Below are positions 1-59,553 of a DNA stretch of 64,000 bases, in pieces (positions within the stretch are counted from its first letter, which is position 1; each line of letters opens with the position of its first letter). The DNA is taken from positions 62,001 to 126,000 of IMG/VR virus record IMGVR_UViG_3300023296_000874. One strand, written 5' to 3'. The notes beneath the pieces were generated by a model, which had not been told where the DNA came from, did not search any database, and saw only the letters and a list, made by a program, of their open reading frames with translations. The position numbers were made by a program, and so were the translations under genes.

Positions 1-36
1 ATGCTCATAATTCCTCGGGTGTCCAGTTACTCCATC

Positions 37-63
37 AACGACGGATACCCCGAGGAAGTTAGA
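37..63 (-). promoter_or_regulatory. Class A (ECF-like) promoter motif TCTAACT-N16-CGTT with RBS-sequestering hairpin; drives a gene starting at nt 8 that runs out of the window
   Basis: Minus strand reads tctaact-tcctcggggtatccgt-cgtt. A 9-bp inverted repeat (ttcctcggg/cccgaggaa, nt 11-57) covers the GAGGA upstream of the ATG at nt 8. Confidence 0.7.
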
Positions 64-84
64 GAGAACTTGTAGGTTTCGAAC

Positions 85-1005
85 TCAGCGGCGGGTACCA
101 GTACGCACCATCAGGTTGAGGGTCTTCCCGCTCACTTTGAAGGTGGCTGTCTGTCCCCATGCGAACTCCAGCCGGTCAGATTCGATGCCGTCCCCGAAGA
201 TGACTCCACCTTCCTGCATACGCGACGTCACCTTGAGAGGAGCATCCGGCTCCACATACCCTTGCTGGATTGAAACGCCTGAGAAGGGGCTGTCCCAAGC
301 CTCTCTCACCTGAAAGATCAGCACTCCCTCTTCGGGATCTGGGAAGGGCAGAGGGTTCCGGCGCTGTGATGCGACGGAGCTTGCCCAACCCGTACAACCC
401 GTACCGGAGCTGATGATCATACCAGAGGAGCTCTGGTACTCGGTGTGCTGCTCGTAGGCGATGTCGTACTTGGCGCTCTGATGGGAGTGGTGTCCGCAGA
501 ACAGCTCGTTGAGGGCGATGATCTTCCGTCCCTCCTCTTGCGTTTCGTCGTCCTTGATCTCCACCTCCACCATTGAGCGGCGCTGAAGCTTGGCGGTGTT
601 GTTCTTGAGGTAGCCGTAGAGCAAGGGGATCTCCCGCTCACGCCACACCATCATCTTCGCCTTGTAGGAGGTGTCGGGGTTGATCCCGGCGACAGTCTGC
701 CCGTCCAGGTACTTGGCTACGTTCGGGACCAAGCCGTCCTGCCCCACAGCAACGATGATGTCACCGGGCTGAAAGACAAACCTGTCCAGATCGCTCCGGA
801 GGCAGCTCGTCTTTCGCCAGGTGTGTGGTACATCGCGGAGGGCACGGGCAGCAACTTTCAAGGTGACGGCGTGCATCCGTTCCACCTTGTCCATCGACTG
901 CCCCATCAGCTCAAGCCTGAACCTCGCCATCTGAACGGTCCCGTGCTCTACGAGCAGAGATTCGTACTCGGTGGTTCTGCGAACCACTACTACTCGAGGT
1001 TCCAC
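85..1005 (-). CDS. NAD kinase-like protein (SPFH-associated subfamily)
   Basis: GQDG in place of the NADK GGDG motif (VAVGQDGLVPNVAKY), ALNE motif and SSGMIISSGTGCTGW. Lies directly downstream of the SPFH gene, as in bacterial NUDIX-SPFH-NADK-like operons. Confidence 0.8.
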   Translation of the reverse strand: MEPRVVVVRRTTEYESLLVEHGTVQMARFRLELMGQSMDKVERMHAVTLKVAARALRDVPHTWRKTSCLRSDLDRFVFQPGDIIVAVGQDGLVPNVAKYLDGQTVAGINPDTSYKAKMMVWREREIPLLYGYLKNNTAKLQRRSMVEVEIKDDETQEEGRKIIALNELFCGHHSHQSAKYDIAYEQHTEYQSSSGMIISSGTGCTGWASSVASQRRNPLPFPDPEEGVLIFQVREAWDSPFSGVSIQQGYVEPDAPLKVTSRMQEGGVIFGDGIESDRLEFAWGQTATFKVSGKTLNLMVRTGTRR

Positions 1006-1014
1006 GGCTGCCTC

Positions 1015-2133
1015 CTACTTGCTGAGCTGCTGCACAGCTTCCAGCAGTCCGCCACCAATGGTCACGGAGCTGAGGTTGCTGAGGCCTGCGGGGATGCCCT
1101 GGATGGCCAGTGCGAGTGCGGCTTCACCCTTCTCCTCGAAGGCTGCGAGCTGAGCCTCAACCTCGGCCACGCGGGCTTCACCGAGCGCCTCTTCCTGAGC
1201 GACGGTCTGAGCGTCCACGGAGATCCGAATGGCGAGTGCCTGCTCGTCGGAAGCAGCCTTGTTCTCGAGGCGCTGGGCCTCGGCGTTGGCGGCGTCCTCG
1301 AGCTGACGTGCGGAGGTGAGCTCCTGAGCCCTGAGGTTGGCCTCAGTCTTCTTGCGCCCCTGCTCCAACTCGGCGTCCGTGCGGATGCTCACAACAGCAG
1401 CGGAGCTGGCTTCCGAGGCCTCACTGTTCACGCGGTCCTGAGCGATCAGGGCCTCGCGCTGCTTGGCGAGCAGAAGCTTGTTGTTCAGTGCCGCTTCCTC
1501 GATGGCACGCTCCTTCTCAGTAGCGTTGGCACGCCGGTCGAAGGTGGCCTCGTCAGCTTCCTGCTTGAGGCGCTCGTTGGTCTTGGTCTGGAGGGCCTGA
1601 GCAACGTCCCGGTTGGGCTTGATGCTGGTCACGCTTGCGGCGAACACCTCGATGCCGATGTCCAGCGCCTGGAGGGCGGCAAGCACAACGTCGGAGATGG
1701 CCTTGGGGTCATCCACAAGCAGCGGCTCGAGCTCCTGCTGGGAGATGTAGCTCCACGCCGCCTGCTGCGCCGTGTTGGTCAGCACCGTGGCGATGTCCGT
1801 GGAAGGGTCGCCCAGCGGAGTGCCGGTGTCGGTGTCCACAGCGAAGTTGAAGCGGGAGGCGATGTTGAGCGCCGCTTCAACTCCTACGCGCCACTGGCCC
1901 GTCGCGCTGACGGTGACGTCCTGGAAGTCCTTGGTGCGGCAGTTGAAGGTCAGCGGGACGGTCTGGTCCACGACTGGTACCTCAGAGAGGCTCGTGCCCT
2001 TGGTCCAGAACCACAGCCAGAAGCTGAGGCCGGTGCCGCTCTTGGTGACCTTGCCACCTGCAGATGCGATCAGAAAAGTGTGAGCCTCGCCACGCACGTT
2101 GCGTAGAGGCCCGAAGGTTGAGATGGTTGCCAT
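1015..2133 (-). CDS. SPFH/band 7 (flotillin-like) domain protein
   Basis: N-terminal band-7 signature (GLSFW...TKDFQDVTV), ALQT...LKQEADEATFDRRA..EKERAIEE motif, long Ala/Glu coiled coil. Confidence 0.85.
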   Translation of the reverse strand: MATISTFGPLRNVRGEAHTFLIASAGGKVTKSGTGLSFWLWFWTKGTSLSEVPVVDQTVPLTFNCRTKDFQDVTVSATGQWRVGVEAALNIASRFNFAVDTDTGTPLGDPSTDIATVLTNTAQQAAWSYISQQELEPLLVDDPKAISDVVLAALQALDIGIEVFAASVTSIKPNRDVAQALQTKTNERLKQEADEATFDRRANATEKERAIEEAALNNKLLLAKQREALIAQDRVNSEASEASSAAVVSIRTDAELEQGRKKTEANLRAQELTSARQLEDAANAEAQRLENKAASDEQALAIRISVDAQTVAQEEALGEARVAEVEAQLAAFEEKGEAALALAIQGIPAGLSNLSSVTIGGGLLEAVQQLSK

Positions 2134-2230
2134 CTTGTGTCTCCGTGATTGGGCTTGTCGCCCTTGGGTTCATACCCTCCTACTGTTCACGGTTGAAGGC
2201 GGGATAGGTTCCCGCCGACGCACATACTTT

Positions 2231-2449
2231 TCAAACGCCCTTGATGTCCCGTAGTCGCTTGAGCTCAAACGGGCTCGCGTGTTCGGTCCAATGGGTCCAC
2301 GGGTCCACACCCAGTTCCTTGCCGACGTACTCGATGTTCTCGAGCTCCTTGCCCAGATCCGTTTCCCCGACGCCATGTGGGTCGTCGGAGAAGAGGTCGA
2401 GGTAGAGCTCGAACAGCTCGGCAACGAATTCCTGGGTGCGTGGTGTCAC
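2231..2449 (-). CDS. hypothetical protein (72 aa, acidic)
   Basis: Start overlaps the stop of the upstream DUF3228 gene (GTGA); codon style typical of the window. Confidence 0.6.
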   Translation of the reverse strand: MTPRTQEFVAELFELYLDLFSDDPHGVGETDLGKELENIEYVGKELGVDPWTHWTEHASPFELKRLRDIKGV

Positions 2450-3090: not shown

Positions 3091-3130
3091 TTGGGTCCGT
3101 TCCTTGGGTCGTTGTCCGTAGTGCTCCCCC

Positions 3131-3157
3131 AACGCATCACGCGGGGGAGCACTCAGA
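3131..3157 (-). promoter_or_regulatory. Class A promoter motif TCTGAGT-N16-CGTT overlapped by a 10-bp GC hairpin
   Basis: Minus strand reads tctgagt-gctcccccgcgtgatg-cgtt; inverted repeat gtgctccccc/gggggagcac at 3121-3152. Confidence 0.65.
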
Positions 3158-3165
3158 GGTTTTCT

Positions 3166-3909: not shown

Positions 3910-3937
3910 AACGAGTTCAACCGGCGTCGAACTCAGA
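3910..3937 (-). promoter_or_regulatory. Class A promoter motif (17-nt spacer) upstream of clpP
   Basis: Minus strand reads tctgagt-N17-cgtt. Confidence 0.55.
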
Positions 3938-3948
3938 GCGTTTCTGGA

Positions 3949-5762: not shown

Positions 5763-5805
5763 GTACTCCCCTTCTAAGCACTCAACGTGGTCAGGTACGG
5801 AATAC

Positions 5806-6120
5806 TCAGAGGTATTTCGGGTCCTGCCACCAGTCCTGGCTTTCCAAATCAAGCATCTCGTAGAGGCGGTCTGGAAGTTCCGACAGCCCTTCCTCCCTGA
5901 ACCACTCCCCACGCCACCGAATGCGGTAGCTGCGAAGTCGCCCATGGATGTAGAACTCGGTGGGTCCCTCTTTGGGGACGAGCAGGATGACCTTCAGCGT
6001 GTAGGGGTTCCCGGTCTGAAGCTCGTTGAGGCGGCGCTCAATGTCCTTGGTGCGTCCGATCTTCACCACCCCGGTCACCGCCGCTTGGATGATGTACAGG
6101 TCCTCCCCAAACGATTTCAC
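5806..6120 (-). CDS. T5orf172 / GIY-YIG superfamily nuclease
   Basis: LYIIQ....VKIGRT.DIERRL.ELQTGNP..L, E..IH..L, RGEWF. Confidence 0.85.
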   Translation of the reverse strand: MKSFGEDLYIIQAAVTGVVKIGRTKDIERRLNELQTGNPYTLKVILLVPKEGPTEFYIHGRLRSYRIRWRGEWFREEGLSELPDRLYEMLDLESQDWWQDPKYL

Positions 6121-10745: not shown

Positions 10746-10773
10746 CTACAAATGGATCATGATCCTTTTGTAG
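10746..10773. promoter_or_regulatory. Back-to-back pair of class B (putative late) promoter motifs
   Basis: Near-palindrome ctacaaatggaTCATGAtccttttgtag gives TCATGATCCATTTGTAG on minus (toward rmlA) and TCATGATCCTTTTGTAG on plus (toward 10810). Confidence 0.7.
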
Positions 10774-14024: not shown

Positions 14025-14299
14025 GCCTGAAGGTTCGTGACGCCGATGAGCTCCCCGAGCAGCGTGCGGCTGAGAGGTTTGCCAGGCTTGTCCTCGTACA
14101 CCTCCCGAACCACGATGCGCTGTGGCGTGCTCTTGGGCACGGACCCCCAGCCCTTGGTGTTGGGAGTGACGTCTGCTGCTGCTTCGTCCCGCATCTTGCA
14201 GTAGACGGCTTGCAGGGTGAGGTCACTGGCATGTCGCATGGTGCCGAAGACGGGCGTCTTGGACGTCAGCCGGTACAGCACATAGATGTATCCGTTCAT
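14021..14299 (-). CDS. hypothetical protein
   Basis: ATG 14299 with GAGG RBS, overlapping the stop of 14296-14487. Confidence 0.55.
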   Translation of the reverse strand: MNGYIYVLYRLTSKTPVFGTMRHASDLTLQAVYCKMRDEAAADVTPNTKGWGSVPKSTPQRIVVREVYEDKPGKPLSRTLLGELIGVTNLQA

Positions 14300-14487
14300 C
14301 GCACAACCTCGAGCGTGTAAGCGGTGAGGCCGAAGCCGCAACCGACGTGATCCTCGGCCCAGGCAATCGCCTGCTCGATGCGGGTGAAGGTCTTGCGGCG
14401 CTTGGGGTCGTCGGTGCGCTGCACACATTGGTGCTCTTCACTGAAGCCCGCGATGTCTTTGCCGCTTTGGTCTTTGAGGTAGTGCAT
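14296..14487 (-). CDS. hypothetical protein (63 aa)
   Basis: ATG 14487 preceded by CGGAG, downstream of a class A promoter. Confidence 0.6.
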   Translation of the reverse strand: MHYLKDQSGKDIAGFSEEHQCVQRTDDPKRRKTFTRIEQAIAWAEDHVGCGFGLTAYTLEVVR

Positions 14488-14492: not shown

Positions 14493-14533
14493 CTCCGTAC
14501 CCACTCAACGAGAGCAGGTACGGAGGACTCAGA
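14493..14533 (-). promoter_or_regulatory. Class A promoter TCTGAGT-N16-CGTT (14507-14533) with RBS-sequestering hairpin
   Basis: tctgagt-cctccgtacctgctct-cgtt; inverted repeat ctccgtacc/ggtacggag (14493-14525) pairs with the GGAG RBS. Confidence 0.7.
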
Positions 14534-14535
14534 GA

Positions 14536-14889: not shown

Positions 14890-15235
14890 GAGTCTTTCCA
14901 GCCGCGAACGGGCTGTCCAGCCTACACATTCCGTGCGGCTGTAATCAAGGGTCTCTGACCGACGAAGGCACCCCGCTCACGTCCAACCCCATTCTTTGCA
15001 CGGAGGAGGGAAGGTGTGAGCGGGGTGCCCAGTCGAAAGATCGCCAGTCCACTCGCTCCCTTGCCTTGGGAGTCCGCTTCGCATACAGGGGGCTGGCATG
15101 GCTCCCATCTAACCGCCCATGGTGCTCAGGCCCCTCTCGAGGCGCTGATCCATAGAGTGCATAACACTTGCCGGGTTCGAACCGGCCACTCACAGGCGCT
15201 GGCAAAAGTCTTCGGGGCTTCTCAGCCCCTTACAT
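14890..15235 (-). ncRNA. candidate structured ncRNA or long structured leader (~350 nt)
   Basis: Own class A promoter at 15242-15268; GNRA-capped hairpins (ggggct-GAGA-agcccc, gcctc-GAGA-ggggc); canonical T-arm gccgg-TTCGAAC-ccggc (15170-15186); 14-bp perfect stem 14967-14980/15016-15029; no credible ORF. Confidence 0.5.
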
Positions 15236-15241
15236 CTCTAC

Positions 15242-15268
15242 AACGAGGCGAGAGCGGCAGCACTCAGA
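15242..15268 (-). promoter_or_regulatory. Class A promoter TCTGAGT-N16-CGTT
   Basis: tctgagt-gctgccgctctcgcct-cgtt. Confidence 0.7.
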
Positions 15269-15270
15269 GA

Positions 15271-15666: not shown

Positions 15667-15683
15667 CTACAAACGGATTATGT
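15667..15683 (-). promoter_or_regulatory. Class B (putative late) promoter motif
   Basis: Minus strand ACATAATCCGTTTGTAG, overlapping the topA stop. Confidence 0.7.
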
Positions 15684-21805: not shown

Positions 21806-21832
21806 AACGCGCTCACCTCGTGGAGAGTTAGA
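21806..21832 (-). promoter_or_regulatory. Class A promoter TCTAACT-N16-CGTT
   Basis: tctaact-ctccacgaggtgagcg-cgtt. Confidence 0.7.
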
Positions 21833-22223
21833 GAGTTTCTTTTCGCTTTCTAATTCGAACCAGAGTCTGCTCTGCTACCGGACAAGATGGTGTTGTGCTT
21901 CTCGGCGTACCGTCTGCGGATTCCTCAGGAGCTTCGTAGTCGATCGTCAACCCTTCCCCATCAGTCTGGCTTGCTTCTGCTTCAAGAGCCACTCCCTCGG
22001 CGTGGATTTGTTCCACGAGGGCAGTAGGATCGCTGACAGACACGGCGCAGACGCGGAACGAGCACTTGCCGCCCGGCTCAATGTCGAGGCCCCGGATCAC
22101 GGATGACTCAGGGAACACACCCGCGCGGCGCAGTTCATCAGCTCCAAAGCGGTCCAGTAGGAAACGGAGCAGCTCCGTCTCATCGATGGGCACGGTCAGC
22201 TCTACTTTCTGAACATCAGACAT
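21828..22223 (-). CDS. hypothetical protein
   Basis: Coupled ORF in the polA-downstream operon. Confidence 0.55.
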   Translation of the reverse strand: MSDVQKVELTVPIDETELLRFLLDRFGADELRRAGVFPESSVIRGLDIEPGGKCSFRVCAVSVSDPTALVEQIHAEGVALEAEASQTDGEGLTIDYEAPEESADGTPRSTTPSCPVAEQTLVRIRKRKETL

Positions 22224-27042: not shown

Positions 27043-27843
27043 TTAGGAGTCCTTACGCTCCACCGGGAGTGTACTCCTGATGCCCCATGTGTTCTTCGCC
27101 CAGAAGGTCTCGAGTGCGAAGTAGCCGCCGAGCATGGTGATCTGGTACGTGAGAACGGGCACCCAAGGCACCGAGCCGAGTAGGGCGGTAAACACTCCCA
27201 GCATCACCACCGCGCTTGTTGTCCGGTACGTCAGGGCCTTGGCGGCGCTGCGCTTGGTCTCTACCTGATCGTCCTCGGTGATGCCGAAGTTGCTGTCGTG
27301 CCACAGGCGCTCATGCACCAGGCTGAAGAAGGTCATCATCACCGAGTAGCCGGTGAGCAGCCACAGGCTCAGTCCGAGCTTCCAAAGCACAAGGGAAAAT
27401 ACTCCGAGTGCGAGGGTGCGGTAGAGCAGCATCTTGGCTGCCGTCCGGTAGCCGGTGCTCATGGCGCTGCGGTCCGGTTCCCAAGGCACACGTCCACGGC
27501 ACCGGTCGTAGGTGCGGAAGCCGAAGATGGCGATGGGGTACACGATGGGCTCACCGTGTAGGAGCAGCACGATGGGGATGAGCTCGGGGAGGCCGACGTT
27601 CCAGAGGATGATGGGGATCACCACGTCCTCGAACAGTTCCCACACCACGGCGAAGACGAAGAAGCGGGGGCCTTGGCTCTTGAGCAGCTTCTTGAGCTCG
27701 CGCCAAGTTTCGAAGATGTTGACCTTCTCCCAGATCTCTCCGGCAGCCCAGCACCATGCACGTCGTAGATGTTTCAGCACTTCTGAACCTCCGTGTTGTA
27801 CTGGAAACGCATCCAGTGTCCGGAAACTCAGAGGTGTGGTCAA
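27043..27843 (-). CDS. membrane protein with two DUF2061-like repeats
   Basis: RTAAKMLLYR...VHERLW and RSAAKALTYR...ALETFW repeats; several TM helices. Confidence 0.6.
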   Translation of the reverse strand: MTTPLSFRTLDAFPVQHGGSEVLKHLRRAWCWAAGEIWEKVNIFETWRELKKLLKSQGPRFFVFAVVWELFEDVVIPIILWNVGLPELIPIVLLLHGEPIVYPIAIFGFRTYDRCRGRVPWEPDRSAMSTGYRTAAKMLLYRTLALGVFSLVLWKLGLSLWLLTGYSVMMTFFSLVHERLWHDSNFGITEDDQVETKRSAAKALTYRTTSAVVMLGVFTALLGSVPWVPVLTYQITMLGGYFALETFWAKNTWGIRSTLPVERKDS

Positions 27844-30520: not shown

Positions 30521-30526
30521 GTGGGC

Positions 30527-33208: not shown

Positions 33209-33703
33209 TCAATCCTCGTAACCGCCGCCATCCTCCCAGGGAAGTCGCCGCAAGCTCCGAAGGATTGTCATGTGCTCCGGTGAAACTCGATCCTGTACCT
33301 GCTGCACAAACGCGTCGTAGCCGGGCATGAGGATGTCGGAGTAGTTTCCCGCCAGGCGATCGTACACGGAGCGAAGCTCTGCGGCCTCTGGAGATCCCAT
33401 CCCCAGCACGGTCGATTCCAGGACAATGGCTTCAATCTCGCGCAGCAGAGCCAACCGAGGCCCTCGATTGAAGGGTACCCGGTCAGCACCCGCTGGAAGG
33501 AGGAGGTTCGGGTGTGCCCGTTCCTCCTCCGTCGCTACGAGCCAGTGACAGATCTCGTGCCGGACGCCAGGCGCGTCATCGCAGAAGATGCTGGTGTAGT
33601 TCTGTTGGGAAAACGGCTTCGGGGAGGGTGGGGTCTGTACCCATTCCTTCCCGGTGATGAGATTCGCTGCCTCTTCTACACTGTCAACTGCGCTGAAACT
33701 CAA
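33209..33703 (-). CDS. hypothetical protein
   Basis: Start reassigned to TTG 33703 (ACGGAG RBS) because the ORF-track ATG lies inside the promoter motif. Confidence 0.5.
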   Translation of the reverse strand: MSFSAVDSVEEAANLITGKEWVQTPPSPKPFSQQNYTSIFCDDAPGVRHEICHWLVATEEERAHPNLLLPAGADRVPFNRGPRLALLREIEAIVLESTVLGMGSPEAAELRSVYDRLAGNYSDILMPGYDAFVQQVQDRVSPEHMTILRSLRRLPWEDGGGYED

Positions 33704-33753
33704 ATGGTACTCCGTGTTGTATATCCAACGGAGTACCATTGAGAAAACTCAGA
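33703..33753 (-). promoter_or_regulatory. Class A promoter TCTGAGT-N16-CGTT (33727-33753) with 13-bp RBS-sequestering hairpin
   Basis: tctgagt-tttctcaatggtactc-cgtt; perfect inverted repeat aatggtactccgt/acggagtaccatt. Confidence 0.7.
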
Positions 33754-35035
33754 GCAGTTCTGCCGCCAAAGCCGCCAGAGCACTACGTTCACCCTTGGTG
33801 AGCGTCACGTGTCCTGCCATGGCATGTCCCTTGAACCGCTCAATGACGTACGTCAATCCGTTGCTCAGGCTGTCAACGTAGGGATTGTCGATCTGTGCCG
33901 GGTCACCCGTGAGCACAATCTTGGTCCCTTCGCCAGCGCGCGTGAGGATCGTCTTCACCTCGTGAGGTGTGAGGTTCTGAGCCTCGTCGATGATCATGAA
34001 CTGGTTGGGGATCGAGCGGCCTCGGATGTAGGTCAGAGGCTCTACCTCAACCACCCCGGTGTCAAGCAGGTACTGGTAGTTCTTGCCACCGCGCCCATTG
34101 GCGTCCTTCTTGGTGGATCCAACCATCAGCTCAAGGTTGTCGAAGATCGGCTTCATCCAGGGATTCAGCTTCTCTTCGATGGTGCCCGGCAGGTAGCCGA
34201 GGTCCTTGCCCATGGGGAAGATGGGCCTACTCACCAGCACCTTGCGGTACTTGTGCGCGTCAGCCGTGAGCGCCATTCCTGCGGCCAGAGCAAGTAGCGT
34301 CTTGCCTGTACCAGCGATGCCGCTGATGGTCACGAGGTTGATGTCGGGATTCATCAGGAGGTGGAGAGCGAAGAGCTGCTCCTTGTTGCGCGGGTGAATG
34401 CCCCACACACCTTCATCGTTCTTGGGCAGGAGGTGTAGCTCATCATCCTGAAGCTGAGCGAGGCCGCTCTGCTTCCCGTTCTTCACCAGCACAAACTGGT
34501 TCTCAACCAACCCCTCAAAGTCGTTGGGAAGGAAACAGTCGCGGAACAGACGGTCGACGGTGGCGGTGTCTACATGCACTTCAGCGAAGCCAGTGTAGAG
34601 GCCATCACTCTCGACGCCTACTCCGGCAGTCTGGTAATCCTCCGAGGTCACGCCAATGGCGTCACCCTTGATCCTCATGTTGGTGTCCCGGCTCACGAGA
34701 ATGACGTTGTCGTCGTCCTTGCGGAGGTCCTGGGCTACACGGATGATCTGATTGTCGTTGCTGCTCTCAGCCAATGGGTCGTCAGTGAACGCTACGCGCA
34801 GGGTGCCGCCTCCTGGGAGGTCGACGCCTTCCCTGAGGGATCCCTGCTCGCGAAGTCCATCGAGGAAACGGGATACATACCTTGCGGCGTACCCAATCTC
34901 ACTCATGTCCTTCTTGAAGGTATCGATCTCTTCAATCACCGTCATGGGGATTACAAGATCGTTCTCTTCGAAGCGGCTGAGTGCCGTGTGGTCGTATAGC
35001 AGAACGTTGGTGTCGAGGACGTAGGTTCGCTTCAC
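33749..35035 (-). CDS. phoH: PIN-PhoH (PhoH2/YlaK-type) protein
   Basis: YVLDTNVLL PIN domain, RNKEQ, GIAGTGKT, GYLPG..EEK, YIRGRS, IIDEAQN, GD..QID. Confidence 0.95.
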   Translation of the reverse strand: MKRTYVLDTNVLLYDHTALSRFEENDLVIPMTVIEEIDTFKKDMSEIGYAARYVSRFLDGLREQGSLREGVDLPGGGTLRVAFTDDPLAESSNDNQIIRVAQDLRKDDDNVILVSRDTNMRIKGDAIGVTSEDYQTAGVGVESDGLYTGFAEVHVDTATVDRLFRDCFLPNDFEGLVENQFVLVKNGKQSGLAQLQDDELHLLPKNDEGVWGIHPRNKEQLFALHLLMNPDINLVTISGIAGTGKTLLALAAGMALTADAHKYRKVLVSRPIFPMGKDLGYLPGTIEEKLNPWMKPIFDNLELMVGSTKKDANGRGGKNYQYLLDTGVVEVEPLTYIRGRSIPNQFMIIDEAQNLTPHEVKTILTRAGEGTKIVLTGDPAQIDNPYVDSLSNGLTYVIERFKGHAMAGHVTLTKGERSALAALAAELL

Positions 35036-35823: not shown

Positions 35824-36381
35824 TCAAGCCCTCGGAGTAGGCAGTCCGTTCAGTAGGTCCCGCGCTGAGTGCTTGGACTCACTATTGGTCTTCACCACGT
35901 ACACCTGCGGGCGTACCTCAATCACACTCTCAACATCCGTGTCCTGAATTCCCGTGGGGAGCTGCACTTCGTGGTCCTTCCCCTCAGCGGTGGTCACTGT
36001 GATGGTTCCCTTGTCACGGAAGGGGTTGGTGGGCGTGGTCCACTCGCGTGTTTCCCACTGCGTCCACCCGTTGTCGTCTGCTTCACCGACAGGGATCTCG
36101 CTGCCATCCTCACGAACGCGCTTGTCGGAGACGGTGTTGGCAGCCGCTACCACACTCTCGGAGCCTTTGGGACGTCCGAACAGGTACTTGAGGATGCCGC
36201 CGATGTTGATGTCGATACCCGACTTGAGCAGCATGAAGCCGCCTACAACCACGAAGATCGCAAGCACCAACGCTACGGGGTAACGAACCAGCCAGGTCAG
36301 AACGGTCTTGAAACCGTTGAGGAGGTTCTGGAAGAAGAGCTTGGTGATGTCACCAAAGGTCGGCTCAGTAGTCTCGGGCAT
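35824..36381 (-). CDS. single-TM inner-membrane protein (i-spanin-like candidate)
   Basis: TM segment YPVALVLAIFVVVGGFML followed by a soluble domain; GGGG RBS before ATG 36381. Confidence 0.5.
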   Translation of the reverse strand: MPETTEPTFGDITKLFFQNLLNGFKTVLTWLVRYPVALVLAIFVVVGGFMLLKSGIDINIGGILKYLFGRPKGSESVVAAANTVSDKRVREDGSEIPVGEADDNGWTQWETREWTTPTNPFRDKGTITVTTAEGKDHEVQLPTGIQDTDVESVIEVRPQVYVVKTNSESKHSARDLLNGLPTPRA

Positions 36382-36389
36382 CTTGCCCC

Positions 36390-38429
36390 CTATCGGCGTC
36401 GGATGTCTGTTGGCATGTCTCGCTTGTTGCCACGAGTGTAGATGTCGGTCAGCCACTTCTTCTGTCGGTCGCTGAGGTCGTCCCAGTTCTTCACACGGCG
36501 GCGCTTCACAAGGCTGTTGATGAACCCTGCCTCGCTACCCGCCCGCATCGTCTGCGTGCAGGAGGTGAAGAACTCATCGAGTGTCATGCGTCCGTTGGTG
36601 GGCGTCTTCGTGAAGCTGCCAGGCGCGGCTACGGGAGCGGCGCTCGAAGCAGAGGCGGGAGCAGTCGGTACCACACTACGGGAGCTGATGCCTCGGAGCC
36701 AACGGAGCTGTCCGGGGCTGAGGTCCTTGATCCTCTTGTACCGGCGCTGCATGTCCTCTACGAACTGTACCTCGCGCTGGGCGCTTGGGTCCTTCAGGCG
36801 GTCAGCTTCCGCAACCAGGTCCTTGTACTCCTGAAGGTCGCGGATATCCTGCTGCTCGGCTGCGGCTGCACGCTTGGCTTCCAGCTTGGCAGCGTCGTCG
36901 TCTGCCTTGGTCTGCTGCTGCTGTGCCGCGCGGGCGTCTGCAATGGCGTCACGGAAGGCGTCTGAGCTACCCATGAGGCGGTTCAGAAGGTCACCGTTCC
37001 GTACCAATGCTTCGGCGGGGACGCTGCATCGCTGGTAGGTGGCGGAGAGGCCGAGGCGCGTGAGGTCGGAGAGCTTGATGTCACCCGCGTCGATGGTGCT
37101 GAACACAGCGGCCTTCAAATCCACCGAGGAGATCGTGGTCACCTTGCGGATGGGGTGGTCGGGTGGAACTGAGCTGCTCCACGAGCTCGCGGGGCGGTAA
37201 TCCCAGCTTGAGCACTTGAGCATGTTGTAGAGCTGAGCGTGTCCGGGGTTTCGGCTGATCCAGTCTCCATAGGTCCACTGCCGGATGAACACGTTGGCGT
37301 CAGTGCTTGGCGCGGTCAGGTTGTGCCTGCGGCCTCCACTGTTGGTGAGCATGGCGTCGATGTTGGTCAGCCGTGCCTCGTAGTCGCTGTACTGCTCATC
37401 TACGATGTGGATCGTTGCTTCCTTCCACTCGTCGATGTACCCCTTGAGGCGGGTACGGTTTCCCACTTCCTTCTTCATGGTGGCGAAGTGGGAGATCACA
37501 TCCCCTTCCACGTCGCTTTGCTTGTCCTCAAGGTCATCAATCTGGCCCTGAATGAAGTTGCGGTACTCACGGAGGATGAGGTCGTATGCCTGCGTAGGCG
37601 TGCCGTACTGCAAGAGCAGTCGGAGCTGCGTCTCGTACTCAACGAAGAGCTGAAGCTTCTTCTCGTCGCTCACCTTCACCCGGTCGATCTTCTGCTTCCT
37701 ACGAATCTTGTCGGGGATTTCCTTCACCAACGTAGTCCTGTAGGTGTCTTCCATCACGCGGCGCATGACGCTCACGTTCCGTACCCACTTGGCGAAGGAG
37801 TCAGAGAGCTGGAACCCCGCCACGCGGCGGAAGGTAGCGAGCTTCGCCTGGAACTCGCCAATGTCGAATCCGTTGGGGAGGTCAGCCTGAAGGGTCTTCA
37901 GCGAGGCGAAGATGGCGTCCTGTCGGTCCCACACGTCAAGGGTGGTGGCATCAACGGCATCGAAGCGCCTGTCCTGCAACCGGGCACGCAACCTGTTGAG
38001 GTAGATGTTCAGTTCCTGCTTGGTGAACCCGCTGAGGACCACGTAGGTCAGGATGCAAGAGGAGCCCAGAACCATCGTGTGATGGTTGAGCTTGTTCTCG
38101 ATCTGGAAGTGGTAGACGATCGGGTTGTGTCCACAGAGCTCGCACTTGCCGTTGCTCTCTGCCCACTGCTTCTTCAGCGCCCACTCCATCTTCGCATCGT
38201 CGTAGGAGTCAGCGTTGGAAACGGCAATCAGGCTGCGCTTCTGCTTCTCTTCAAAGCCTGAGCCTGATGCACCATCGAGGGCAGCGGAGAGGTCGTCAAC
38301 GGCGCTCTCAAGTTCTGCGACCGTGTCGAGGTCGCTGTCGTTACGGAAAGACATTCCCTTCTTAGACCCAGGCTGAGCCGGGTCCGTGCGAAAGAAAAGC
38401 ATCTCATCACGAGCAAATCGAAGAGCCAT
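36390..38429 (-). CDS. 679-aa hypothetical protein with CxxC-H-C zinc motif and two C-terminal helical repeats
   Basis: CELCGHNPIVYHF...LGSSCI; repeats E..F...M......LS..Q..WL..I; class B motif upstream. Confidence 0.7.
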   Translation of the reverse strand: MALRFARDEMLFFRTDPAQPGSKKGMSFRNDSDLDTVAELESAVDDLSAALDGASGSGFEEKQKRSLIAVSNADSYDDAKMEWALKKQWAESNGKCELCGHNPIVYHFQIENKLNHHTMVLGSSCILTYVVLSGFTKQELNIYLNRLRARLQDRRFDAVDATTLDVWDRQDAIFASLKTLQADLPNGFDIGEFQAKLATFRRVAGFQLSDSFAKWVRNVSVMRRVMEDTYRTTLVKEIPDKIRRKQKIDRVKVSDEKKLQLFVEYETQLRLLLQYGTPTQAYDLILREYRNFIQGQIDDLEDKQSDVEGDVISHFATMKKEVGNRTRLKGYIDEWKEATIHIVDEQYSDYEARLTNIDAMLTNSGGRRHNLTAPSTDANVFIRQWTYGDWISRNPGHAQLYNMLKCSSWDYRPASSWSSSVPPDHPIRKVTTISSVDLKAAVFSTIDAGDIKLSDLTRLGLSATYQRCSVPAEALVRNGDLLNRLMGSSDAFRDAIADARAAQQQQTKADDDAAKLEAKRAAAAEQQDIRDLQEYKDLVAEADRLKDPSAQREVQFVEDMQRRYKRIKDLSPGQLRWLRGISSRSVVPTAPASASSAAPVAAPGSFTKTPTNGRMTLDEFFTSCTQTMRAGSEAGFINSLVKRRRVKNWDDLSDRQKKWLTDIYTRGNKRDMPTDIRRR

Positions 38430-38443
38430 AGTGCCAGACCTCT

Positions 38444-38487
38444 GCGGGGGAAGGTTCTACCCCTCCCCCGCCACAAAACGATTATGA
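38444..38487 (-). promoter_or_regulatory. Class B motif (38471-38487) followed by a GC-rich hairpin
   Basis: TCATAATCGTTTTGTGG; hairpin gcggggga.gg/cc.tcccccgc. Confidence 0.6.
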
Positions 38488-38494
38488 ACCGACG

Positions 38495-39247
38495 CTACGG
38501 AGTATCGCCCCAAGGAGGAGCATCACCAACGGTAGGCTGCGTCTCTCCAATCACCATGCCGGGATCGGTACGCTCGTCTACGGGCTCCATGGCGTCGTCT
38601 GGCAAGTCGAACGGTACGTCCCGCCCCGGTGCCCCACCACCGCCACTAAAGCCGCCTCCGTAGCCACCACCGCCGCCTCCACCACCTGGGAGGCTAAAGC
38701 CCCCAGCGTTCTTGCTGCTCCAGGAATCAATGAACGCCTTCATGGGCTCAGTGAACTTGGTTCCGAGGTTGTAAGCCAGCAGTCCAAGGTTGGTCAGGAA
38801 CAGCATGGATAGCACGCCAAGGTACAGCGTAGCAAGCGGGCTGTTCACGTCCTGAGAGGTACGCAGCGAAACCATCGCCATCACACACATCGTGAGGAAC
38901 GTCACCATCGTGAGCCAGAAGCTCACACGTCCAAGGCTGACCTTCCACCTGCCGTCCTTGCTCTTCTCATAGAACAGAGGGGCAATGCGGTCAAACCTCT
39001 TTCGAGGACGGTGTTCAGCACCCGCACCGGGTCCGTCGATGTCGTTGTGGTCGTCGAAATGGAGCGGTGACTCTCGACGCGCGGTGATGACCGGGGCGCG
39101 AGAAGTTGTCGCTCGGGGAGCTGACAACTGTTGACGTGTCTTCTTCACCGCGAAGACCACGGCGAGTACTACAAGAAGGATGAGTGCGGAAACCAGGCCG
39201 GTTCCAAGCCAGGGCACACCGAACAGATCCCAGTGGATAAAGTCCAT
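38495..39247 (-). CDS. putative holin (3 TM helices)
   Basis: Three hydrophobic segments, E..DG...SLGRV.F motif, directly downstream of the endolysin. Confidence 0.55.
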   Translation of the reverse strand: MDFIHWDLFGVPWLGTGLVSALILLVVLAVVFAVKKTRQQLSAPRATTSRAPVITARRESPLHFDDHNDIDGPGAGAEHRPRKRFDRIAPLFYEKSKDGRWKVSLGRVSFWLTMVTFLTMCVMAMVSLRTSQDVNSPLATLYLGVLSMLFLTNLGLLAYNLGTKFTEPMKAFIDSWSSKNAGGFSLPGGGGGGGGYGGGFSGGGGAPGRDVPFDLPDDAMEPVDERTDPGMVIGETQPTVGDAPPWGDTP

Positions 39248-39284
39248 GAGATTTACCTACAGAATAGGGTTGTCGTGTTGGTGT

Positions 39285-40019
39285 CTATGTGTTTGGGACG
39301 GACGCGCCGTTTGCCTTCAAGAAGGATACAAGCCAACTGTCGATCATCTCCAGTGCATCCGGGTCACGGGTAGCAGATACCCATCCGTTTGCCTGCTTGA
39401 TCTGCGTGATGGCTGCCTTGGTGTTCCTACCGACAATGCCGTCGATAGTACCGATGTCAATTCCGTAGGCGAGGATCTGGCCCTGCACCCACGCGGCCTC
39501 ATCGTCCTTCACTTCTCGAATGTCAACGCCGATGTCCAGGATGGCTGCACGTACCGCCATCTTGTAGCCTTCAAGGCGTCGGACGTTCTGGAACTCCCCA
39601 CGACACTCGAAGTGCCAGGCCTCGCTCTTGCGGGAGTTGGGCTCAGAGATGATCGGCACCACGTTGTAGCGTGCGGCGATACCCCAGAACACCTCAAGGA
39701 AGTTGTCACCCAAGGGTCGGAGTGCCCCAAGGTCAACGTCCATTGCTCGGCCAGCCTCATGGAAACTTGATCCGGGCGGTGGAGAGTAGCTCCTCTTTCG
39801 GCCCGTCTTGTAGTCCATGTGAGCCTTGAGCTGCATGTCGTAGGATCGGAACAGGTCCGAGAGCCTCAACTTGCCGCCCGCCACCCTCACATCATCTTCG
39901 ATGTTTCGAATGGAGCTGATGAAGTCAGGGGTGCAGAGGGCCATCCGCTTCGGGAGCGCAACGAAGTTGCCCTTCACCTTGTAGATGGATTCAATGCTGA
40001 TCGGAATGAGTTCAGTCAC
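39285..40019 (-). CDS. Endolysin, peptidase M15 family with PG-binding domain
   Basis: FRSY..Q, PGSSFHEAGRAMD (SxHxxGxAxD), EAWH, IDGIVGRNT..AI. Confidence 0.85.
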   Translation of the reverse strand: MTELIPISIESIYKVKGNFVALPKRMALCTPDFISSIRNIEDDVRVAGGKLRLSDLFRSYDMQLKAHMDYKTGRKRSYSPPPGSSFHEAGRAMDVDLGALRPLGDNFLEVFWGIAARYNVVPIISEPNSRKSEAWHFECRGEFQNVRRLEGYKMAVRAAILDIGVDIREVKDDEAAWVQGQILAYGIDIGTIDGIVGRNTKAAITQIKQANGWVSATRDPDALEMIDSWLVSFLKANGASVPNT

Positions 40020-54996: not shown

Positions 54997-55013
54997 CTAC
55001 AAACGGATTATGA
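54997..55013 (-). promoter_or_regulatory. Class B (putative late) promoter motif
   Basis: TCATAATCCGTTTGTAG at the head of the tail operon. Confidence 0.75.
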
Positions 55014-55474: not shown

Positions 55475-55476
55475 TC

Positions 55477-57587: not shown

Positions 57588-57604
57588 CTACAAATGCAGT
57601 ATGA
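57588..57604 (-). promoter_or_regulatory. Class B promoter motif variant
   Basis: TCATACTGCATTTGTAG, 39 nt upstream of the baseplate gene. Confidence 0.6.
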
Positions 57605-58100: not shown

Positions 58101-58205
58101 TATTCCACACTATCAACGGCTTTCCGTTGTAGAATGGAGTACTGGCATTCTGTCATCACACGAGAAGAGACTATTCCCACTCCCTGCGAAAAAGACGACC
58201 CCTTC

Positions 58206-58232
58206 CCTGAGAATACGGGCACATGGTCCGTT
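58206..58232 (+). promoter_or_regulatory. degenerate class A promoter CCTGAGA-N16-CGTT
   Basis: Same spacing as the consensus, two mismatches. Confidence 0.45.
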
Positions 58233-58270
58233 GAGTCTCTGAACCCCTTTCGGAGACCCAATACCCAACC

Positions 58271-59275
58271 ATGATACTCCTTGTAATCGCTGTAACCGCA
58301 GTTGTACTTGCCTCGGCGCTCTGCTCCGGCTCTGAAGCCGCCTTGATGGCAATGCCCAACGTGCGTGTTCGCCAGCTCGCGGAGGAAGGTGGCTCAACAG
58401 CCGCCATACTGCTCCGGTTGAAAGACAACCTCGACAGGCCCATTGCTGCCATCGTGGTTCTCAACAACATCGCCAACATCGTCGGCTCCATCGTGGTTGG
58501 TGGGATTGCTACTGACGTGCTCGGAAGTGCCTACCTCGGTGCCTTCTCAGCCGTGTTGACCTTCGCCATCATCCTCTTCGCAGAGATCATCCCCAAGAGC
58601 ATCGGCACCAACTACCCGGAGCGCATCAGCCTCCTGATTGCACGACCGCTCAGTGCGATCTCGTGGTTGCTGACCCCGGCACTCTGGATGCTCGAACAGG
58701 TGACCAAGCTCATTGGCGGACCCAACGGTGCTACGGCAGCGGACGAGGCTACCTTGCGCTTCATGGTGCGGGAAGCCGGACGTGAGGACCAGATTGAGGA
58801 GGATGAGCGCGACATGATCCTCCGGGTGTTCAGCCTCAACGACCTGACCGCCAGCGACATCATGACTCCCCGTACCGCGATGACCTACCTCCGCGCTGAC
58901 CTGACTGCCAAGGAGCAGGAGGCCCAGATCAAGGCGTCACAGCACTCCCGCATCATCGTTGTGGGTGAGACGCTCGACGACGTGGTGGGCGTGGTGATGC
59001 TGAGGGACTTGCTCCTCTCGCTCATGAATGGCGGACTGCTACCGAAGCCTGTGCCTGCCGCCTTTGTCAGCCCCGACATGCCCGCCGATGAGCTCATGCG
59101 GCACTTCCTACCCGCGCGGAACCACATGGCTCTCGTGCGGGGAGAGTACGGCGCGGTACATGGCTTGGTGACCCTCGAGGACGTCCTTGAGATCGTTGTT
59201 GGCGAAGAGATTGTTGACGAGACTGACCGTGACGACGACATGCAGGCTGTTGCACGGGACCGCGCTACATCCTGA
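58271..59275 (+). CDS. CNNM/CorB-family (DUF21 + CBS) Mg2+/metal transport protein
   Basis: SALCSGSEAAL, LNNIANI, IILFAEIIPKS, DIMTPR, HSRI.V, EYG...GLVTLEDVLE.VVG.EIVDETD. Confidence 0.92.
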   Translation: MILLVIAVTAVVLASALCSGSEAALMAMPNVRVRQLAEEGGSTAAILLRLKDNLDRPIAAIVVLNNIANIVGSIVVGGIATDVLGSAYLGAFSAVLTFAIILFAEIIPKSIGTNYPERISLLIARPLSAISWLLTPALWMLEQVTKLIGGPNGATAADEATLRFMVREAGREDQIEEDERDMILRVFSLNDLTASDIMTPRTAMTYLRADLTAKEQEAQIKASQHSRIIVVGETLDDVVGVVMLRDLLLSLMNGGLLPKPVPAAFVSPDMPADELMRHFLPARNHMALVRGEYGAVHGLVTLEDVLEIVVGEEIVDETDRDDDMQAVARDRATS

Positions 59276-59281
59276 ATAGCC

Positions 59282-59326
59282 TCTGAGTGATCAGGCGCTC
59301 CGTCCGTTACCTGTGCAGCACGGAGC
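59282..59326 (+). promoter_or_regulatory. Class A promoter TCTGAGT-N16-CGTT (59282-59308) with RBS-sequestering hairpin
   Basis: tctgagt-gatcaggcgctccgtc-cgtt; gctccgt/acggagc pairs with the GGAG RBS. Confidence 0.7.
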
Positions 59327-59331
59327 ACAAC

Positions 59332-59553
59332 ATGGCCCTCGCCCAGCGACAAGACAGCACCACCGACCAGATCGAAACCGTCATCGAAGAGGCGCGCAAG
59401 CAGGACTTCCCCGTGGCATGGCTCGAGGACTGGGAAGACTGGACGCGCTCAGAGAGCGCGGACCTCGTGGGGTGCTACTGCATCATCGCTGATGAGGCCG
59501 GGTGCTACGACGCCAAGGACGCCATCATGCGCAAGTGGGAAGCTGCCTCATGA
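59332..59553 (+). CDS. hypothetical protein
   Basis: ATG 59332 after ACGGAG. Confidence 0.6.
   Translation: MALAQRQDSTTDQIETVIEEARKQDFPVAWLEDWEDWTRSESADLVGCYCIIADEAGCYDAKDAIMRKWEAAS

What the first reader, a model, noticed from the sequence alone, without database searches (positions are those of the whole stretch)
8..59332. Promoter-embedded anti-Shine-Dalgarno hairpins: a repeated read-through-silencing device
In four class A promoters the spacer is the reverse complement of the RBS region of the next gene: 11-57 (9 bp), 14493-14525 (9 bp), 33703-33740 (13 bp perfect) and 59297-59326 (7 bp). The predicted TSS falls in the loop. A read-through transcript from upstream would therefore bury the RBS, while a transcript from the local promoter lacks the 5' arm and is translatable. 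This logic is established for a few T4 late genes (e, soc, I-TevI). Here it appears to be reused repeatedly at ECF-like promoters of small unknown genes, which flags those genes as possibly toxic or tightly timed effectors.
Basis: partly seen in the sequence, partly recalled or inferred. Interest (0 to 1): 0.72.

Follow-up and report, generated by a model that had tools for sequence, protein, structure and literature searches.

The report
Phage promoters that hide ribosome sites
In an uncultivated jumbo phage, about a third of one promoter family carries, inside the promoter, a stretch complementary to the next gene's ribosome-binding site. Transcripts reading through from upstream would therefore fold the site away, a trick already known from phage T4, B. 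subtilis sigG and E. coli sigma-54 promoters.

Summary
All four hairpins exist at the stated coordinates. Three are on the minus strand, which is the coding strand there. They sit in a real promoter-like family, CTCTGA(G/C)T-N16-CGTT, about 9 nt upstream of a conserved TA. There are 16 exact copies in the 257.5-kb jumbo-phage contig against 0 for the reversed pattern.

Across 26-29 such promoters, complementarity between the promoter and its own Shine-Dalgarno (SD) region far exceeds the controls:
- At least 7 bp in 10/29 class A genes against 12/274 other genes (p=4e-6).
- Energy to expose the SD: 7.4 kcal/mol in own read-through leaders, 4.9 in promoter-swapped chimeras, 2.0 in leaders truncated at the predicted start (permutation p<5e-5).

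Sites 1-3 are individually significant. Site 4 (7 bp) is not. A fifth strong case lies at window 27782-27832, with more elsewhere in the genome, for about 10 of 26 in all. A second promoter class (CATAATCCnTTTGTAG, n=21) shows no such effect.

The T4-like read-through-silencing reading is the best explanation, but it rests on computation only. No start site is mapped and no close relatives exist for covariation. The claim about small, possibly toxic effector genes is not supported. Downstream genes are 56-523 aa and include an NAPRTase-like enzyme, DUF1848 and a membrane protein. No sigma factor was found. This is a new member of a known kind.

The parts
37..64 (-). Class A promoter of site 1 (CTCTAACT-N16-CGTT). 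It drives a 523-aa NAPRTase-like gene that starts at window 8 and runs off the window.
   Evidence: motif; gene family; homologues cover 97-100% of the 523-aa reading.
11..57 (-). Site 1 anti-SD hairpin. 5' arm TTCCTCGGG (57..49), 3' arm CCCGAGGAA (19..11) covering SD GAGGAA. ATG at 8..6.
   Evidence: Hairpin dG -20.6 kcal/mol. SD opening energy 11.1 against a median of 4.8 for swapped promoters, higher than all 25 swaps. Spacer-shuffle p=0.007.
14507..14534 (-). Class A promoter of site 2 (CTCTGAGT-N16-CGTT). It drives a 63-aa ORF (14296-14487).
14493..14525 (-). Site 2 anti-SD hairpin. CTCCGTACC pairs with GGTACGGAG (9 bp Watson-Crick, 14 pairs with G-U). The -10 CGTT lies in the loop.
   Evidence: z=-3.27; dG -24.4; opening 13.4 against 5.1; 0/150 shuffles reach it.
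33727..33754 (-). Class A promoter of site 3. The TGA inside the -35 box is the stop codon of the upstream PhoH gene (33749-35035). The promoter drives a 164-aa ORF that starts at TTG 33703.
   Evidence: (PhoH).
33703..33740 (-). Site 3 anti-SD hairpin, 13 bp perfect. AATGGTACTCCGT pairs with ACGGAGTACCATT. The 5' arm includes CGT of the -10, and the 3' arm covers the SD and the first base of the start codon.
   Evidence: z=-5.25; 0/200 shuffles; dG -20.4; opening 14.1 against 4.9; 0/150 shuffles.
59281..59308 (+). Class A promoter of site 4. It drives a 73-aa ORF (59332-59553).
59297..59326 (+). Site 4 hairpin, 7 bp (GCTCCGT pairs with ACGGAGC). It is present but individually at chance level.
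   Evidence: z=+0.45; dG -11.3; opening 6.8 against median 5.1, rank 9 of 25; 20% of shuffles at least as high.
27782..27833 (-). The class A promoter spans 27806-27833. Its -35 box and first spacer bases, TCTGAGTTTCCG (27832..27821), pair with CGGAGGTTCAGA (27793..27782) over the SD of a 245-aa membrane-protein gene (GTG at 27780). There is also an inner 6-bp stem around the -10.
   Evidence: dG -22.0; opening 10.4 against 4.9; 0/150 shuffles. The orthologous gene in L030 is also sequestered, by a different sequence.
3121..3158 (-). Class A promoter with a 10-bp hairpin, GTGCTCCCCC (3152..3143) pairing with GGGGGAGCAC (3130..3121). It flanks the -10 but does not cover the real RBS, so it is a counter-example.
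   Evidence: SD opening only 0.5 kcal/mol.
3910..3938 (-). Class A promoter (17-nt spacer) without an anti-SD device.
5784..5811 (-). Class A promoter without an anti-SD device.
   Evidence: opening 2.9, rank 22.
15242..15269 (-). Class A promoter followed by a GC hairpin (GGGGCT-GAGA-AGCCCC) and CTTTTG. No adjacent ORF start.
21806..21833 (-). Class A promoter (CTCTAACT variant) with a long leader and no device.

Best explanation
The window belongs to a jumbo phage of at least 257 kb. Its genes lie in long same-strand arrays with no detectable intrinsic terminators.

One promoter family (class A) has the form CTCTGA(G/C)T-N16-CGTT, with a probable start about 9 nt downstream at a conserved TA. 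It is inserted directly between genes and followed after 11-20 nt by the SD, often ACGGAG.

In about 10 of 26 of these promoters, part of the promoter is complementary to the gene's own SD or start codon. The complementary part is the free 16-nt spacer, sometimes with the -35 box or the CGT of the -10.

An RNA arriving from upstream contains both arms and folds into a hairpin of -9 to -24 kcal/mol that buries the RBS. An RNA started at the local promoter begins in the loop, lacks the 5' arm and has an open RBS. These genes would then be translated only when class A promoters fire, and would be insulated from read-through.

Shown here: the motif, the hairpins, their enrichment, their specificity to class A and to the RBS, and the predicted open state of truncated leaders.

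Inferred: that the motif is a promoter, where the start site is, that read-through occurs, and that translation is blocked.
For: - Motif enrichment and the position profile with conserved TA at +35/36.
- Own against cross pairs, p about 1e-4.
- Class A genes against other genes, 34.5% against 4.4% with at least 7 bp, p=4e-6.
- SD opening energy 7.41 for own leaders, 4.88 for swapped, 2.04 for truncated, p<5e-5. Seven promoters beat all 25 swaps.
- CTCC/CCTC occurs in 15/29 spacers against 16-18% in controls, p about 3-5e-5.
- The 13-, 12- and one of the two 9-bp longest complements fall on the RBS window; the other 9-bp one (genome 177552) falls 10-19 nt inside the coding region. In two long-leader promoters the spacer pairs with the distant RBS rather than with the nearest sequence.
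- Class B promoters (n=21) show no effect, p=0.71, which serves as a negative control.
- There is no excess of intrinsic terminators, so read-through is expected.
- Devices tend to sit where a same-strand gene ends within 60 nt upstream: 10/15 against 3/12, p=0.038.
- Additional class A promoters on other contigs show the same bimodal pattern, with 5/13 sequestered at rank 0-1.
- Relative L026 (PhoH 70% identical) has, in the same PhoH-to-SNF2 slot, a non-homologous gene behind a class A promoter. A different 12-14-bp anti-SD hairpin starts in its -10.
- Precedents: T4 e/soc/49/I-TevI (PMC3014915), sigG (PMC5942855), sigma-54 insulators (10.1101/086108).
Against: - No start site or expression data exist.
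- No close relatives were available, so there is no true compensatory-change test.
- Site 4 is at chance level, and about 60% of class A promoters lack the device.
- Two perfect hairpins flank the -10 without touching the RBS: window 3121-3152, and L067:789 with 12 bp.
- Sense and antisense strands fold equally well, so wobble pairs do not prove an RNA-level, sense-strand function.
- The context association is weak. With the stricter device definition it is 8/15 against 2/11, p about 0.08 (hand-computed hypergeometric).
- The polymerase or sigma factor that reads the motif is unknown.
Confidence: 0.62

Rival explanations
1. Generic intergenic RNA hairpins. These could be 3'-end stabilisers, processing sites or non-canonical terminators of the upstream message. 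They would overlap the SD only because the roughly 55-nt gap is filled by promoter and RBS, leaving the spacer and the leader as the only free places for arms.
For: Two strong hairpins flank the -10 without covering the RBS (window 3121-3152, L067:789). Relative L026 has a terminator-like hairpin with the -35 box in its loop. Leaders are so short that almost any 3' arm hits the SD.
Against: The 3' arms are not followed by U-tracts, and none is scored as terminator-like. In the long-leader promoters at genome 180666 and 151078 the spacer pairs with the distant RBS or start codon rather than with nearby sequence. Anti-SD tetramers are specifically enriched in spacers. Class B promoter junctions show nothing comparable.
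Confidence: 0.15
2. Translational coupling. The hairpin closes the downstream RBS until a ribosome finishing the upstream gene melts it. On polycistronic RNA the downstream gene would then be translated only together with its neighbour.
For: Devices are commonest where a same-strand gene ends within 60 nt upstream. In several cases the stop codon is the TGA inside the -35 box, and the 5' partner region starts at or before the stop (genome 89833, 76534, 40987, 180011).
Against: In most strong cases the 5' arm starts 8-27 nt or more beyond the stop codon, at or past the reach of a terminating ribosome (sites 1, 3, 4; genome 14862, 11215, 152093). Non-promoter junctions in the same genome carry such hairpins at near-background rate, 4.4% against 2.3%. 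Stop-to-start distances of 50-75 nt are long for reinitiation.
Confidence: 0.08
3. DNA-level palindromes around the -10 and start site. These could be operators for regulators, or cruciform or single-strand structures that modulate promoter activity. On this reading SD overlap is incidental.
For: The stems are mostly perfect Watson-Crick, and sense and antisense strands fold equally well. Hairpins at window 3121-3152 and L067:789 are centred on the -10.
Against: Arm sequences differ at every promoter, so no common binding protein is plausible. Arm positions shift relative to the -35 and -10 but keep covering the SD. Loops of 12-40 nt are poor for cruciforms.
Confidence: 0.06
4. Chance plus motif composition. 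The CT-rich promoter consensus (CTCT, CGT) and a conserved ACGGAG SD would pair by accident.
For: Swapped promoters still raise SD opening energy from 2.0 to 4.9 kcal/mol. Site 4 is indistinguishable from shuffles. ACGGAG is conserved at class A genes.
Against: Own pairs beat cross pairs, which share the same consensus, with p<5e-5. Perfect stems of 13, 12 and 9 bp do not occur among the 812 cross pairs beyond 2 at 9 bp.
Confidence: 0.04

Closest known systems
Phage T4 genes e, soc, 49 and I-TevI (also I-TevII/III, Aeh1 mobE): RBS hairpins with a late promoter in the 5' arm
   Same: A long read-through transcript sequesters the SD or start codon in a helix. A promoter immediately upstream of the RBS starts transcription inside the structure, so the short transcript lacks the 5' strand and is translated (PMC3014915, section 29).
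   Different: The promoter type differs. T4 late promoters are a single TATAAATA element read by gp55. Here the motif is bipartite, CTCTGAGT-N16-CGTT, with an unknown sigma factor. The 5' arm here lies in the -35/-10 spacer. About a third of one promoter class uses the device. The timing may be inverted, because the other class (B), which drives the tail sheath, looks late. Nothing has been tested experimentally.
CT-rich anti-SD insulators inside E. coli sigma-54 promoters (Levy et al., bioRxiv 10.1101/086108)
   Same: Short CT-rich motifs inside the promoter, within about 25 bp upstream of the SD, pair with the RBS and silence expression from read-through. They are enriched in one promoter class relative to others. 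Here CTCC/CCTC occurs in 15/29 spacers against 16-18% in controls, and even swapped promoters give about 3 kcal/mol of basal sequestration.
   Different: This is not a sigma-54 promoter, since it lacks the GG-N10-GC arrangement. Many stems here are long (9-14 bp) and tailored to the individual gene rather than 3-5-nt generic motifs. The setting is a phage genome.
Bacillus subtilis sigG: a large hairpin blocks translation of the spoIIG read-through transcript
   Same: The hairpin cannot form in transcripts that start at the gene's own sigma-dependent promoter, and it blocks translation of upstream-initiated RNA (PMC5942855).
   Different: That is a single cellular gene with a stem of more than 20 bp. 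Here the device is repeated across a phage promoter family.
ECF sigma-factor promoters
   Same: The -10 core is CGT-containing, the spacer is a fixed 16 nt, and the distance to the probable start is short (ECF consensus from general knowledge).
   Different: The -35 box, CTCTGAGT, lacks the (G)GAAC signature. No sigma-70-family gene was detected in the 257-kb contig.

Membership tests
T4-type promoter-in-hairpin RBS sequestration | The SD and/or start codon is paired in a stable helix in the upstream-initiated transcript. | tested here: met
   Predicted only. Hairpins are -9 to -24 kcal/mol. SD opening energy is at least 8 kcal/mol in 11/26 own leaders against 13% of swapped ones. Sites 2 and 3 have z=-3.3 and -5.3.
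T4-type promoter-in-hairpin RBS sequestration | A promoter lies within the 5' arm or loop, so the locally started transcript lacks the 5' arm. | tested here: inconclusive
   The 5' arms lie between the -35 and -10 of a strongly enriched bipartite motif, and truncated leaders are open at 2.0 kcal/mol. However, promoter activity and the start site are inferred, and no RNA data exist.
T4-type promoter-in-hairpin RBS sequestration | Long transcripts are poorly translated and short ones well translated. | not testable with these tools
   This needs reporter fusions, toeprinting or ribosome profiling.
T4-type promoter-in-hairpin RBS sequestration | The structure is kept in relatives through compensatory change. 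| tested here: inconclusive
   Only distant relatives were found. L026 has a different hairpin before a non-homologous gene in the same slot. Orthologous 245-aa gene: SD unpaired 0.13 in this phage, 0.25 in L030, 0.41 in L026. Near-identical copies are invariant.
Sigma-54 promoter-embedded anti-SD insulators | A CT-rich anti-SD motif lies inside the promoter within about 25 bp of the SD and is enriched in that promoter class. | tested here: met
   CTCC/CCTC occurs in 15/29 spacers against 18% of genome windows (p=5e-5) and 15.7% at the same offset in other genes (p=3e-5).
Sigma-54 promoter-embedded anti-SD insulators | A sigma-54 (-24 GG / -12 GC) promoter. | tested here: not met
   The motif is CTCTGAGT-N16-CGTT. 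It works like this family but is not a member.
ECF sigma promoter | A -35 box with the AAC signature, a 16-17-nt spacer and a CGT-type -10. | tested here: inconclusive
   The spacer of 16 nt and the CGTT -10 are met. The -35 box is CTCTGA(G/C)T, and only the minor CTCTAACT variant has AAC.
ECF sigma promoter | A cognate sigma-70-family or ECF sigma gene. | tested here: not met
   No significant hit came from Sigma70_r2, r4, r4_2 or TIGR02937. No T7-like or multisubunit RNA polymerase was found. The contig is only 81% complete and the host is unknown.
Intrinsic terminator | A GC-rich stem followed by a U-tract. | tested here: not met
   None of the four hairpins is reported, and terminator-like sites are at or below shuffle expectation.

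The most novel reading that the evidence does not exclude
The class A promoter, its short leader and an unusual (C)ACGGAG SD may form one co-evolved cassette of about 50 nt in a clade of uncultivated jumbo phages. The promoter consensus itself (CTCT in the -35 box, CGT in the -10) is partly anti-SD, so every copy insulates a little (about 3 kcal/mol). Gene-specific spacer sequences then tune insulation from none up to more than 20 kcal/mol. This would be a genome-wide, graded system that decides gene by gene whether read-through RNA is translated, read by an as yet unidentified sigma factor or polymerase. It may also travel with inserted accessory genes, since non-homologous genes occupy the same slot in this phage and in L026.
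Probability: 0.2. Interest if true: 0.65.

Novelty: new member of a known kind. Interest (0 to 1): 0.45.

Why it matters
If true, translational insulation against read-through is not a curiosity of a few T4 genes. It would be a routine design element in large phage genomes that pack promoters between genes without terminators.

It would also give a sequence-only way to sort genes of uncultivated phages into two groups: those translated only from their own promoter, and those also expressed by read-through. The same signature would locate transcription starts, because the start must lie between the arms.

The promoter family and a second one (CATAATCCnTTTGTAG) are themselves useful annotations for a phage group whose transcription machinery is unknown.

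Tried and rejected
- RNA-seq: no public RNA run holds this phage, so no start-site mapping was possible and read laying was not used.
- Relatives for covariation:
  - A megablast of window 30000-40000 against phage GenBank records found nothing.
  - IMG/VR PhoH relatives are at most 53% identical, with other promoters.
  - The promoter-pattern scan of IMG/VR found only an identical copy.
  - PhoH, PolA and NAPRTase homologue contigs are mostly too distant and lack the motif (L027-L032, L045-L047). One contig had no DNA.
  - A 99.6%-identical strain has no changes in the three promoters it covers.
- Extra contigs from the metagenome pattern scan share no protein similarity with this contig and are probably its missing part, so they are not phylogenetically independent. 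The genome search could not read those records.
- The mean per-base unpaired probability proved an insensitive metric. With it, spacer shuffles gave p=0.18 for the 13-bp site 3. It was replaced by SD opening energy.
- The sense-versus-antisense folding test for RNA-level selection showed no asymmetry and is inconclusive.
- The sigma and RNA polymerase search was negative. A weak Sigma70_r4 hit lies in a shadow ORF, and a weak r2 hit in a 583-aa protein was not confirmed.
- Rfam and tRNA scans of the window found nothing.
- The 'small toxic effector' idea is rejected on gene sizes and families.

Full report
**What the window is.** The window is bases 62001-126000 of a 257,533-bp IMG/VR virus contig. 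CheckV estimates it as 81% complete, and it is the JGI record Ga0222664_1000010. GC is about 0.59. It encodes PolA, topoisomerase I, DnaB, an SNF2 helicase, PhoH and beta-helix fibre proteins. Nearly all genes between 1-10.7 kb and 14-57.5 kb lie on the minus strand. It is a jumbo phage with no cultured or close sequenced relative in the phage collection.

**Checking the observation.** Sites 1-3 have to be read on the minus strand.
- Site 1: TTCCTCGGG pairs with CCCGAGGAA (9 bp) before an ATG at position 8.
- Site 2: CTCCGTACC pairs with GGTACGGAG (9 bp, 14 pairs with G-U) before the ATG at 14487.
- Site 3: AATGGTACTCCGT pairs with ACGGAGTACCATT (13 bp) before TTG 33703.
- Site 4 (plus strand): GCTCCGT pairs with ACGGAGC (7 bp) before ATG 59332.

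In each case the 5' arm sits in the spacer of a bipartite motif and the 3' arm covers the SD.

**The promoter family.** The motif is CTCTGA(G/C)T-N16-CGTT.
- There are 16 exact copies in the genome against 0 for the reversed pattern. The window has 8 copies of the core against 0.44 expected.
- With one mismatch, or the CTCTAACT variant, 29 copies lie 36-75 nt upstream of a start codon on the coding strand.
- The spacer is 16 nt in 44 of 61 relaxed hits.
- A conserved (R)TA lies 8-9 nt after CGTT (A in 21/29), which I take as the probable start. This placement is an inference.
- The leader is only 11-20 nt, and its SD is unusually often ACGGAG: 12/29 against 15/274 other genes, p=4e-7.
- No sigma-70-family protein, T7-like polymerase or multisubunit polymerase was detected in the contig. 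'ECF-like' is therefore only a resemblance (a CGT-type -10 and a 16-nt spacer).
- Sigma-70-type promoters and intrinsic terminators are at or below shuffle expectation in the window, and none of the four hairpins scores as terminator-like. Read-through between neighbouring genes is thus to be expected.

**Is the complementarity more than chance?** Several controls agree.
1. Own against cross pairs. I paired each promoter (box to +34) with its own RBS or with the RBS of the other 28 promoters. Cross pairs keep all consensus elements. The own pairs have a perfect complement of at least 7 bp in 8/29 against about 1.7 expected (p about 2e-4), and mean length p about 1e-4.
2. Other genes. A complement of at least 7 bp between -58..-19 and -18..+3 occurs in 10/29 class A genes against 12/274 others (Fisher p=4e-6). 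The cross-control rate is 2.3%.
3. Opening energy. This is the free energy needed to expose the SD. It averages 7.41 kcal/mol in the native read-through leader, 4.88 when the upstream half is swapped for another class A promoter, and 2.04 in leaders truncated at the predicted start. The permutation p is below 5e-5. At least 8 kcal/mol is reached in 11/26 own leaders against 13% of swapped ones and 0 truncated ones.
4. Motif content. The anti-SD tetramers CTCC/CCTC occur in 15/29 spacers against 18% of genome windows and 15.7% at the same offset in other genes (p=5e-5 and 3e-5).
5. Negative control. A second promoter-like family, (t)CATAATCCnTTTGTAG, has 21 copies with a downstream gene, one of them the tail sheath, so it is probably late. 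It shows no effect: 0.401 own against 0.387 swapped, p=0.71.

The distribution is bimodal. The native leader beats all 25 swaps at genome positions 62064 (site 1), 76534 (site 2), 95754 (site 3), 14862 (12 bp, 23 kcal/mol), 152093, 177552 and 180666. It is second best at 89833 (window 27833) and 11215. About 60% of class A promoters show nothing.

Per site, spacer shuffles reach the observed opening energy in 0.7% (site 1), 0/150 (site 2), 0/150 (site 3) and 20% (site 4) of trials. Whole-leader z-scores are -0.92, -3.27, -5.25 and +0.45. Sites 1-3 stand on their own. Site 4 is credible only as a weak member of an enriched class.

**Does the pairing track the RBS?**
- When each promoter is compared with the 240 nt downstream, the 13-bp, 12-bp and one of the two 9-bp best complements fall on the RBS window. 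The other 9-bp complement, at genome 177552, falls 10-19 nt inside the coding region.
- Six of the 15 best complements of at least 7 bp fall on the RBS window, where about 11% would be expected.
- In two promoters with 70-nt leaders (genome 180666 and 151078), the spacer pairs with the distant start codon or SD rather than with nearby sequence.
- In every strong case the 5' arm ends at or before position +28 from the box start, and the 3' arm begins at +33 to +45. Any start between them removes the 5' arm.

**Context.** Devices are more frequent where a same-strand gene ends within 60 nt upstream: 10/15 against 3/12, one-sided p=0.038. With the stricter opening-energy definition this becomes 8/15 against 2/11 and 0/5 at divergent junctions, p about 0.08 by my hand-computed hypergeometric. 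The association is suggestive, not firm.

**Relatives and replication.** Close relatives are lacking.
- L026 (Logan contig, PhoH 70% identical, GC 0.56) uses the same promoter family. In the same PhoH-to-SNF2 slot it carries a non-homologous 146-aa gene. The leader of that gene forms a different 12-14-bp hairpin (GTTCCTTTGGGT pairs with ACCCAAAGGAAC) that starts in the -10. Its z-score is -4.07, and the SD is 0.00 unpaired in the long leader against 0.63 in the short one.
- For the orthologous 245-aa membrane-protein gene, SD unpaired probability is 0.13 in this phage. In L030 it is 0.25, with a different arm sequence and a CGTC -10. In L026 it is 0.41.
- A metagenome scan found further contigs from the same and sister samples that use class A promoters. 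They share no nucleotide or protein similarity with this contig and are probably its missing part.
- Among 13 further promoters (11 on those contigs, 2 on L026), 5 have the SD sequestered with rank 0-1 among swaps. The permutation p is 0.07-0.09, and a binomial p from my arithmetic is about 0.04.

**The downstream genes.** They are not a coherent 'small effector' set. They include:
- a 523-aa NAPRTase-like protein at site 1, where homologues cover the whole reading;
- DUF1848 (293 aa);
- a DUF6283/phrog_5443 protein (187 aa);
- a 245-aa multi-pass membrane protein;
- several unknown ORFs of 56-183 aa.

Median length is 165 aa with the device against 210 without, p=0.35. The genome median is 194 aa.

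**Mechanism and rivals.** The best explanation is read-through insulation of the T4 e/soc/49/I-TevI type (PMC3014915). It equally resembles the sigG case (PMC5942855) and the CT-rich anti-SD insulators found inside E. coli sigma-54 promoters (10.1101/086108). I put it at about 0.62.

The main rival holds that these are generic intergenic hairpins forced onto the SD by compaction. Two perfect -10-flanking hairpins that miss the RBS keep it alive: window 3121-3152 and L067:789.

Translational coupling is unlikely for most sites, because the 5' arm lies beyond the reach of a terminating ribosome. A DNA-level role could not be excluded by the wobble-pair test, but it is disfavoured by the diversity of arm sequences.

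If class B is late and class A earlier, the logic here would run opposite to T4. Class A genes would be kept silent on late read-through RNA. This is speculation.

**Verdict.** It is a new member of a known kind of regulation, notable mainly for its frequency within one promoter class of an uncultivated jumbo phage.

Noticed in passing
window 15667-15682 (-), 10746-10761 (-) and 10758-10773 (+), 54997-55012 (-), 57588-57603 (-), 38471-38486 (-); about 15 more in genome 128-238 kb: A second promoter-like family, (t)CATAATCCnTTTGTAG, lies 15-75 nt upstream of start codons. One copy precedes a tail-sheath gene, so it is probably a late class. A similar motif (CATAaTCTGTTTGTAg) occurs in the distant relative L031. 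It shows no anti-SD enrichment.
   Followed up: partly
window 10746-10773: Two class B motifs sit back to back on opposite strands and share GATCATGATC in the divergent intergenic region. This looks like a compact bidirectional promoter palindrome.
   Followed up: no
window 3121-3152 (-); L067:789-840 (+): Perfect 10-bp and 12-bp hairpins flank the -10 of class A promoters without touching the real RBS. One arm is SD-like and the other anti-SD-like. Their function is unexplained.
   Followed up: partly
window 15195-15269 (-): This class A promoter has no adjacent ORF start. A GC hairpin (GGGGCT-GAGA-AGCCCC) and CTTTTG follow the probable start. It could be a small RNA, a 5' stabiliser or an attenuator. 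There is no Rfam hit in the window.
   Followed up: no
all class A promoters (e.g. window 33710-33716, 59320-59325): The SD of class A genes is unusually often (C)ACGGAG at a fixed distance from CGTT: 12/29 against 15/274 other genes. The AC is not explained by ordinary 16S pairing. Promoter, leader and SD look like one conserved cassette.
   Followed up: partly
window 33749-33751, 5806-5808; genome 40982-40984: The TGA inside the -35 box CTCTGAGT serves as the stop codon of the upstream gene in several junctions, so the gene end and the promoter overlap.
   Followed up: partly
L027:11348-14413, L028:2445-5510: In a distant relative the SNF2 helicase is 1021 aa against 577 aa here, and it carries a LAGLIDADG_3 domain. 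This probably reflects an intein or homing-endonuclease insertion.
   Followed up: no
L048, L071, L075, L069, L067 (contigs Ga0222664_1000209, _1000173, Ga0222673_1000142, Ga0075113_1001243): These contigs come from the same or sister metagenomes and have the same GC and the same class A promoters, but no similarity to this contig. They are probably the missing roughly 19% of this phage genome.
   Followed up: partly
window 6-8 (site 1 gene start): The public gene call for the NAPRTase-like protein is 496 aa, which is 95% of the 523-aa reading. Homologues align over 97-100% of the 523-aa reading that begins at the ATG behind the SD GAGGAA. The public start therefore looks too far downstream.
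   Followed up: partly
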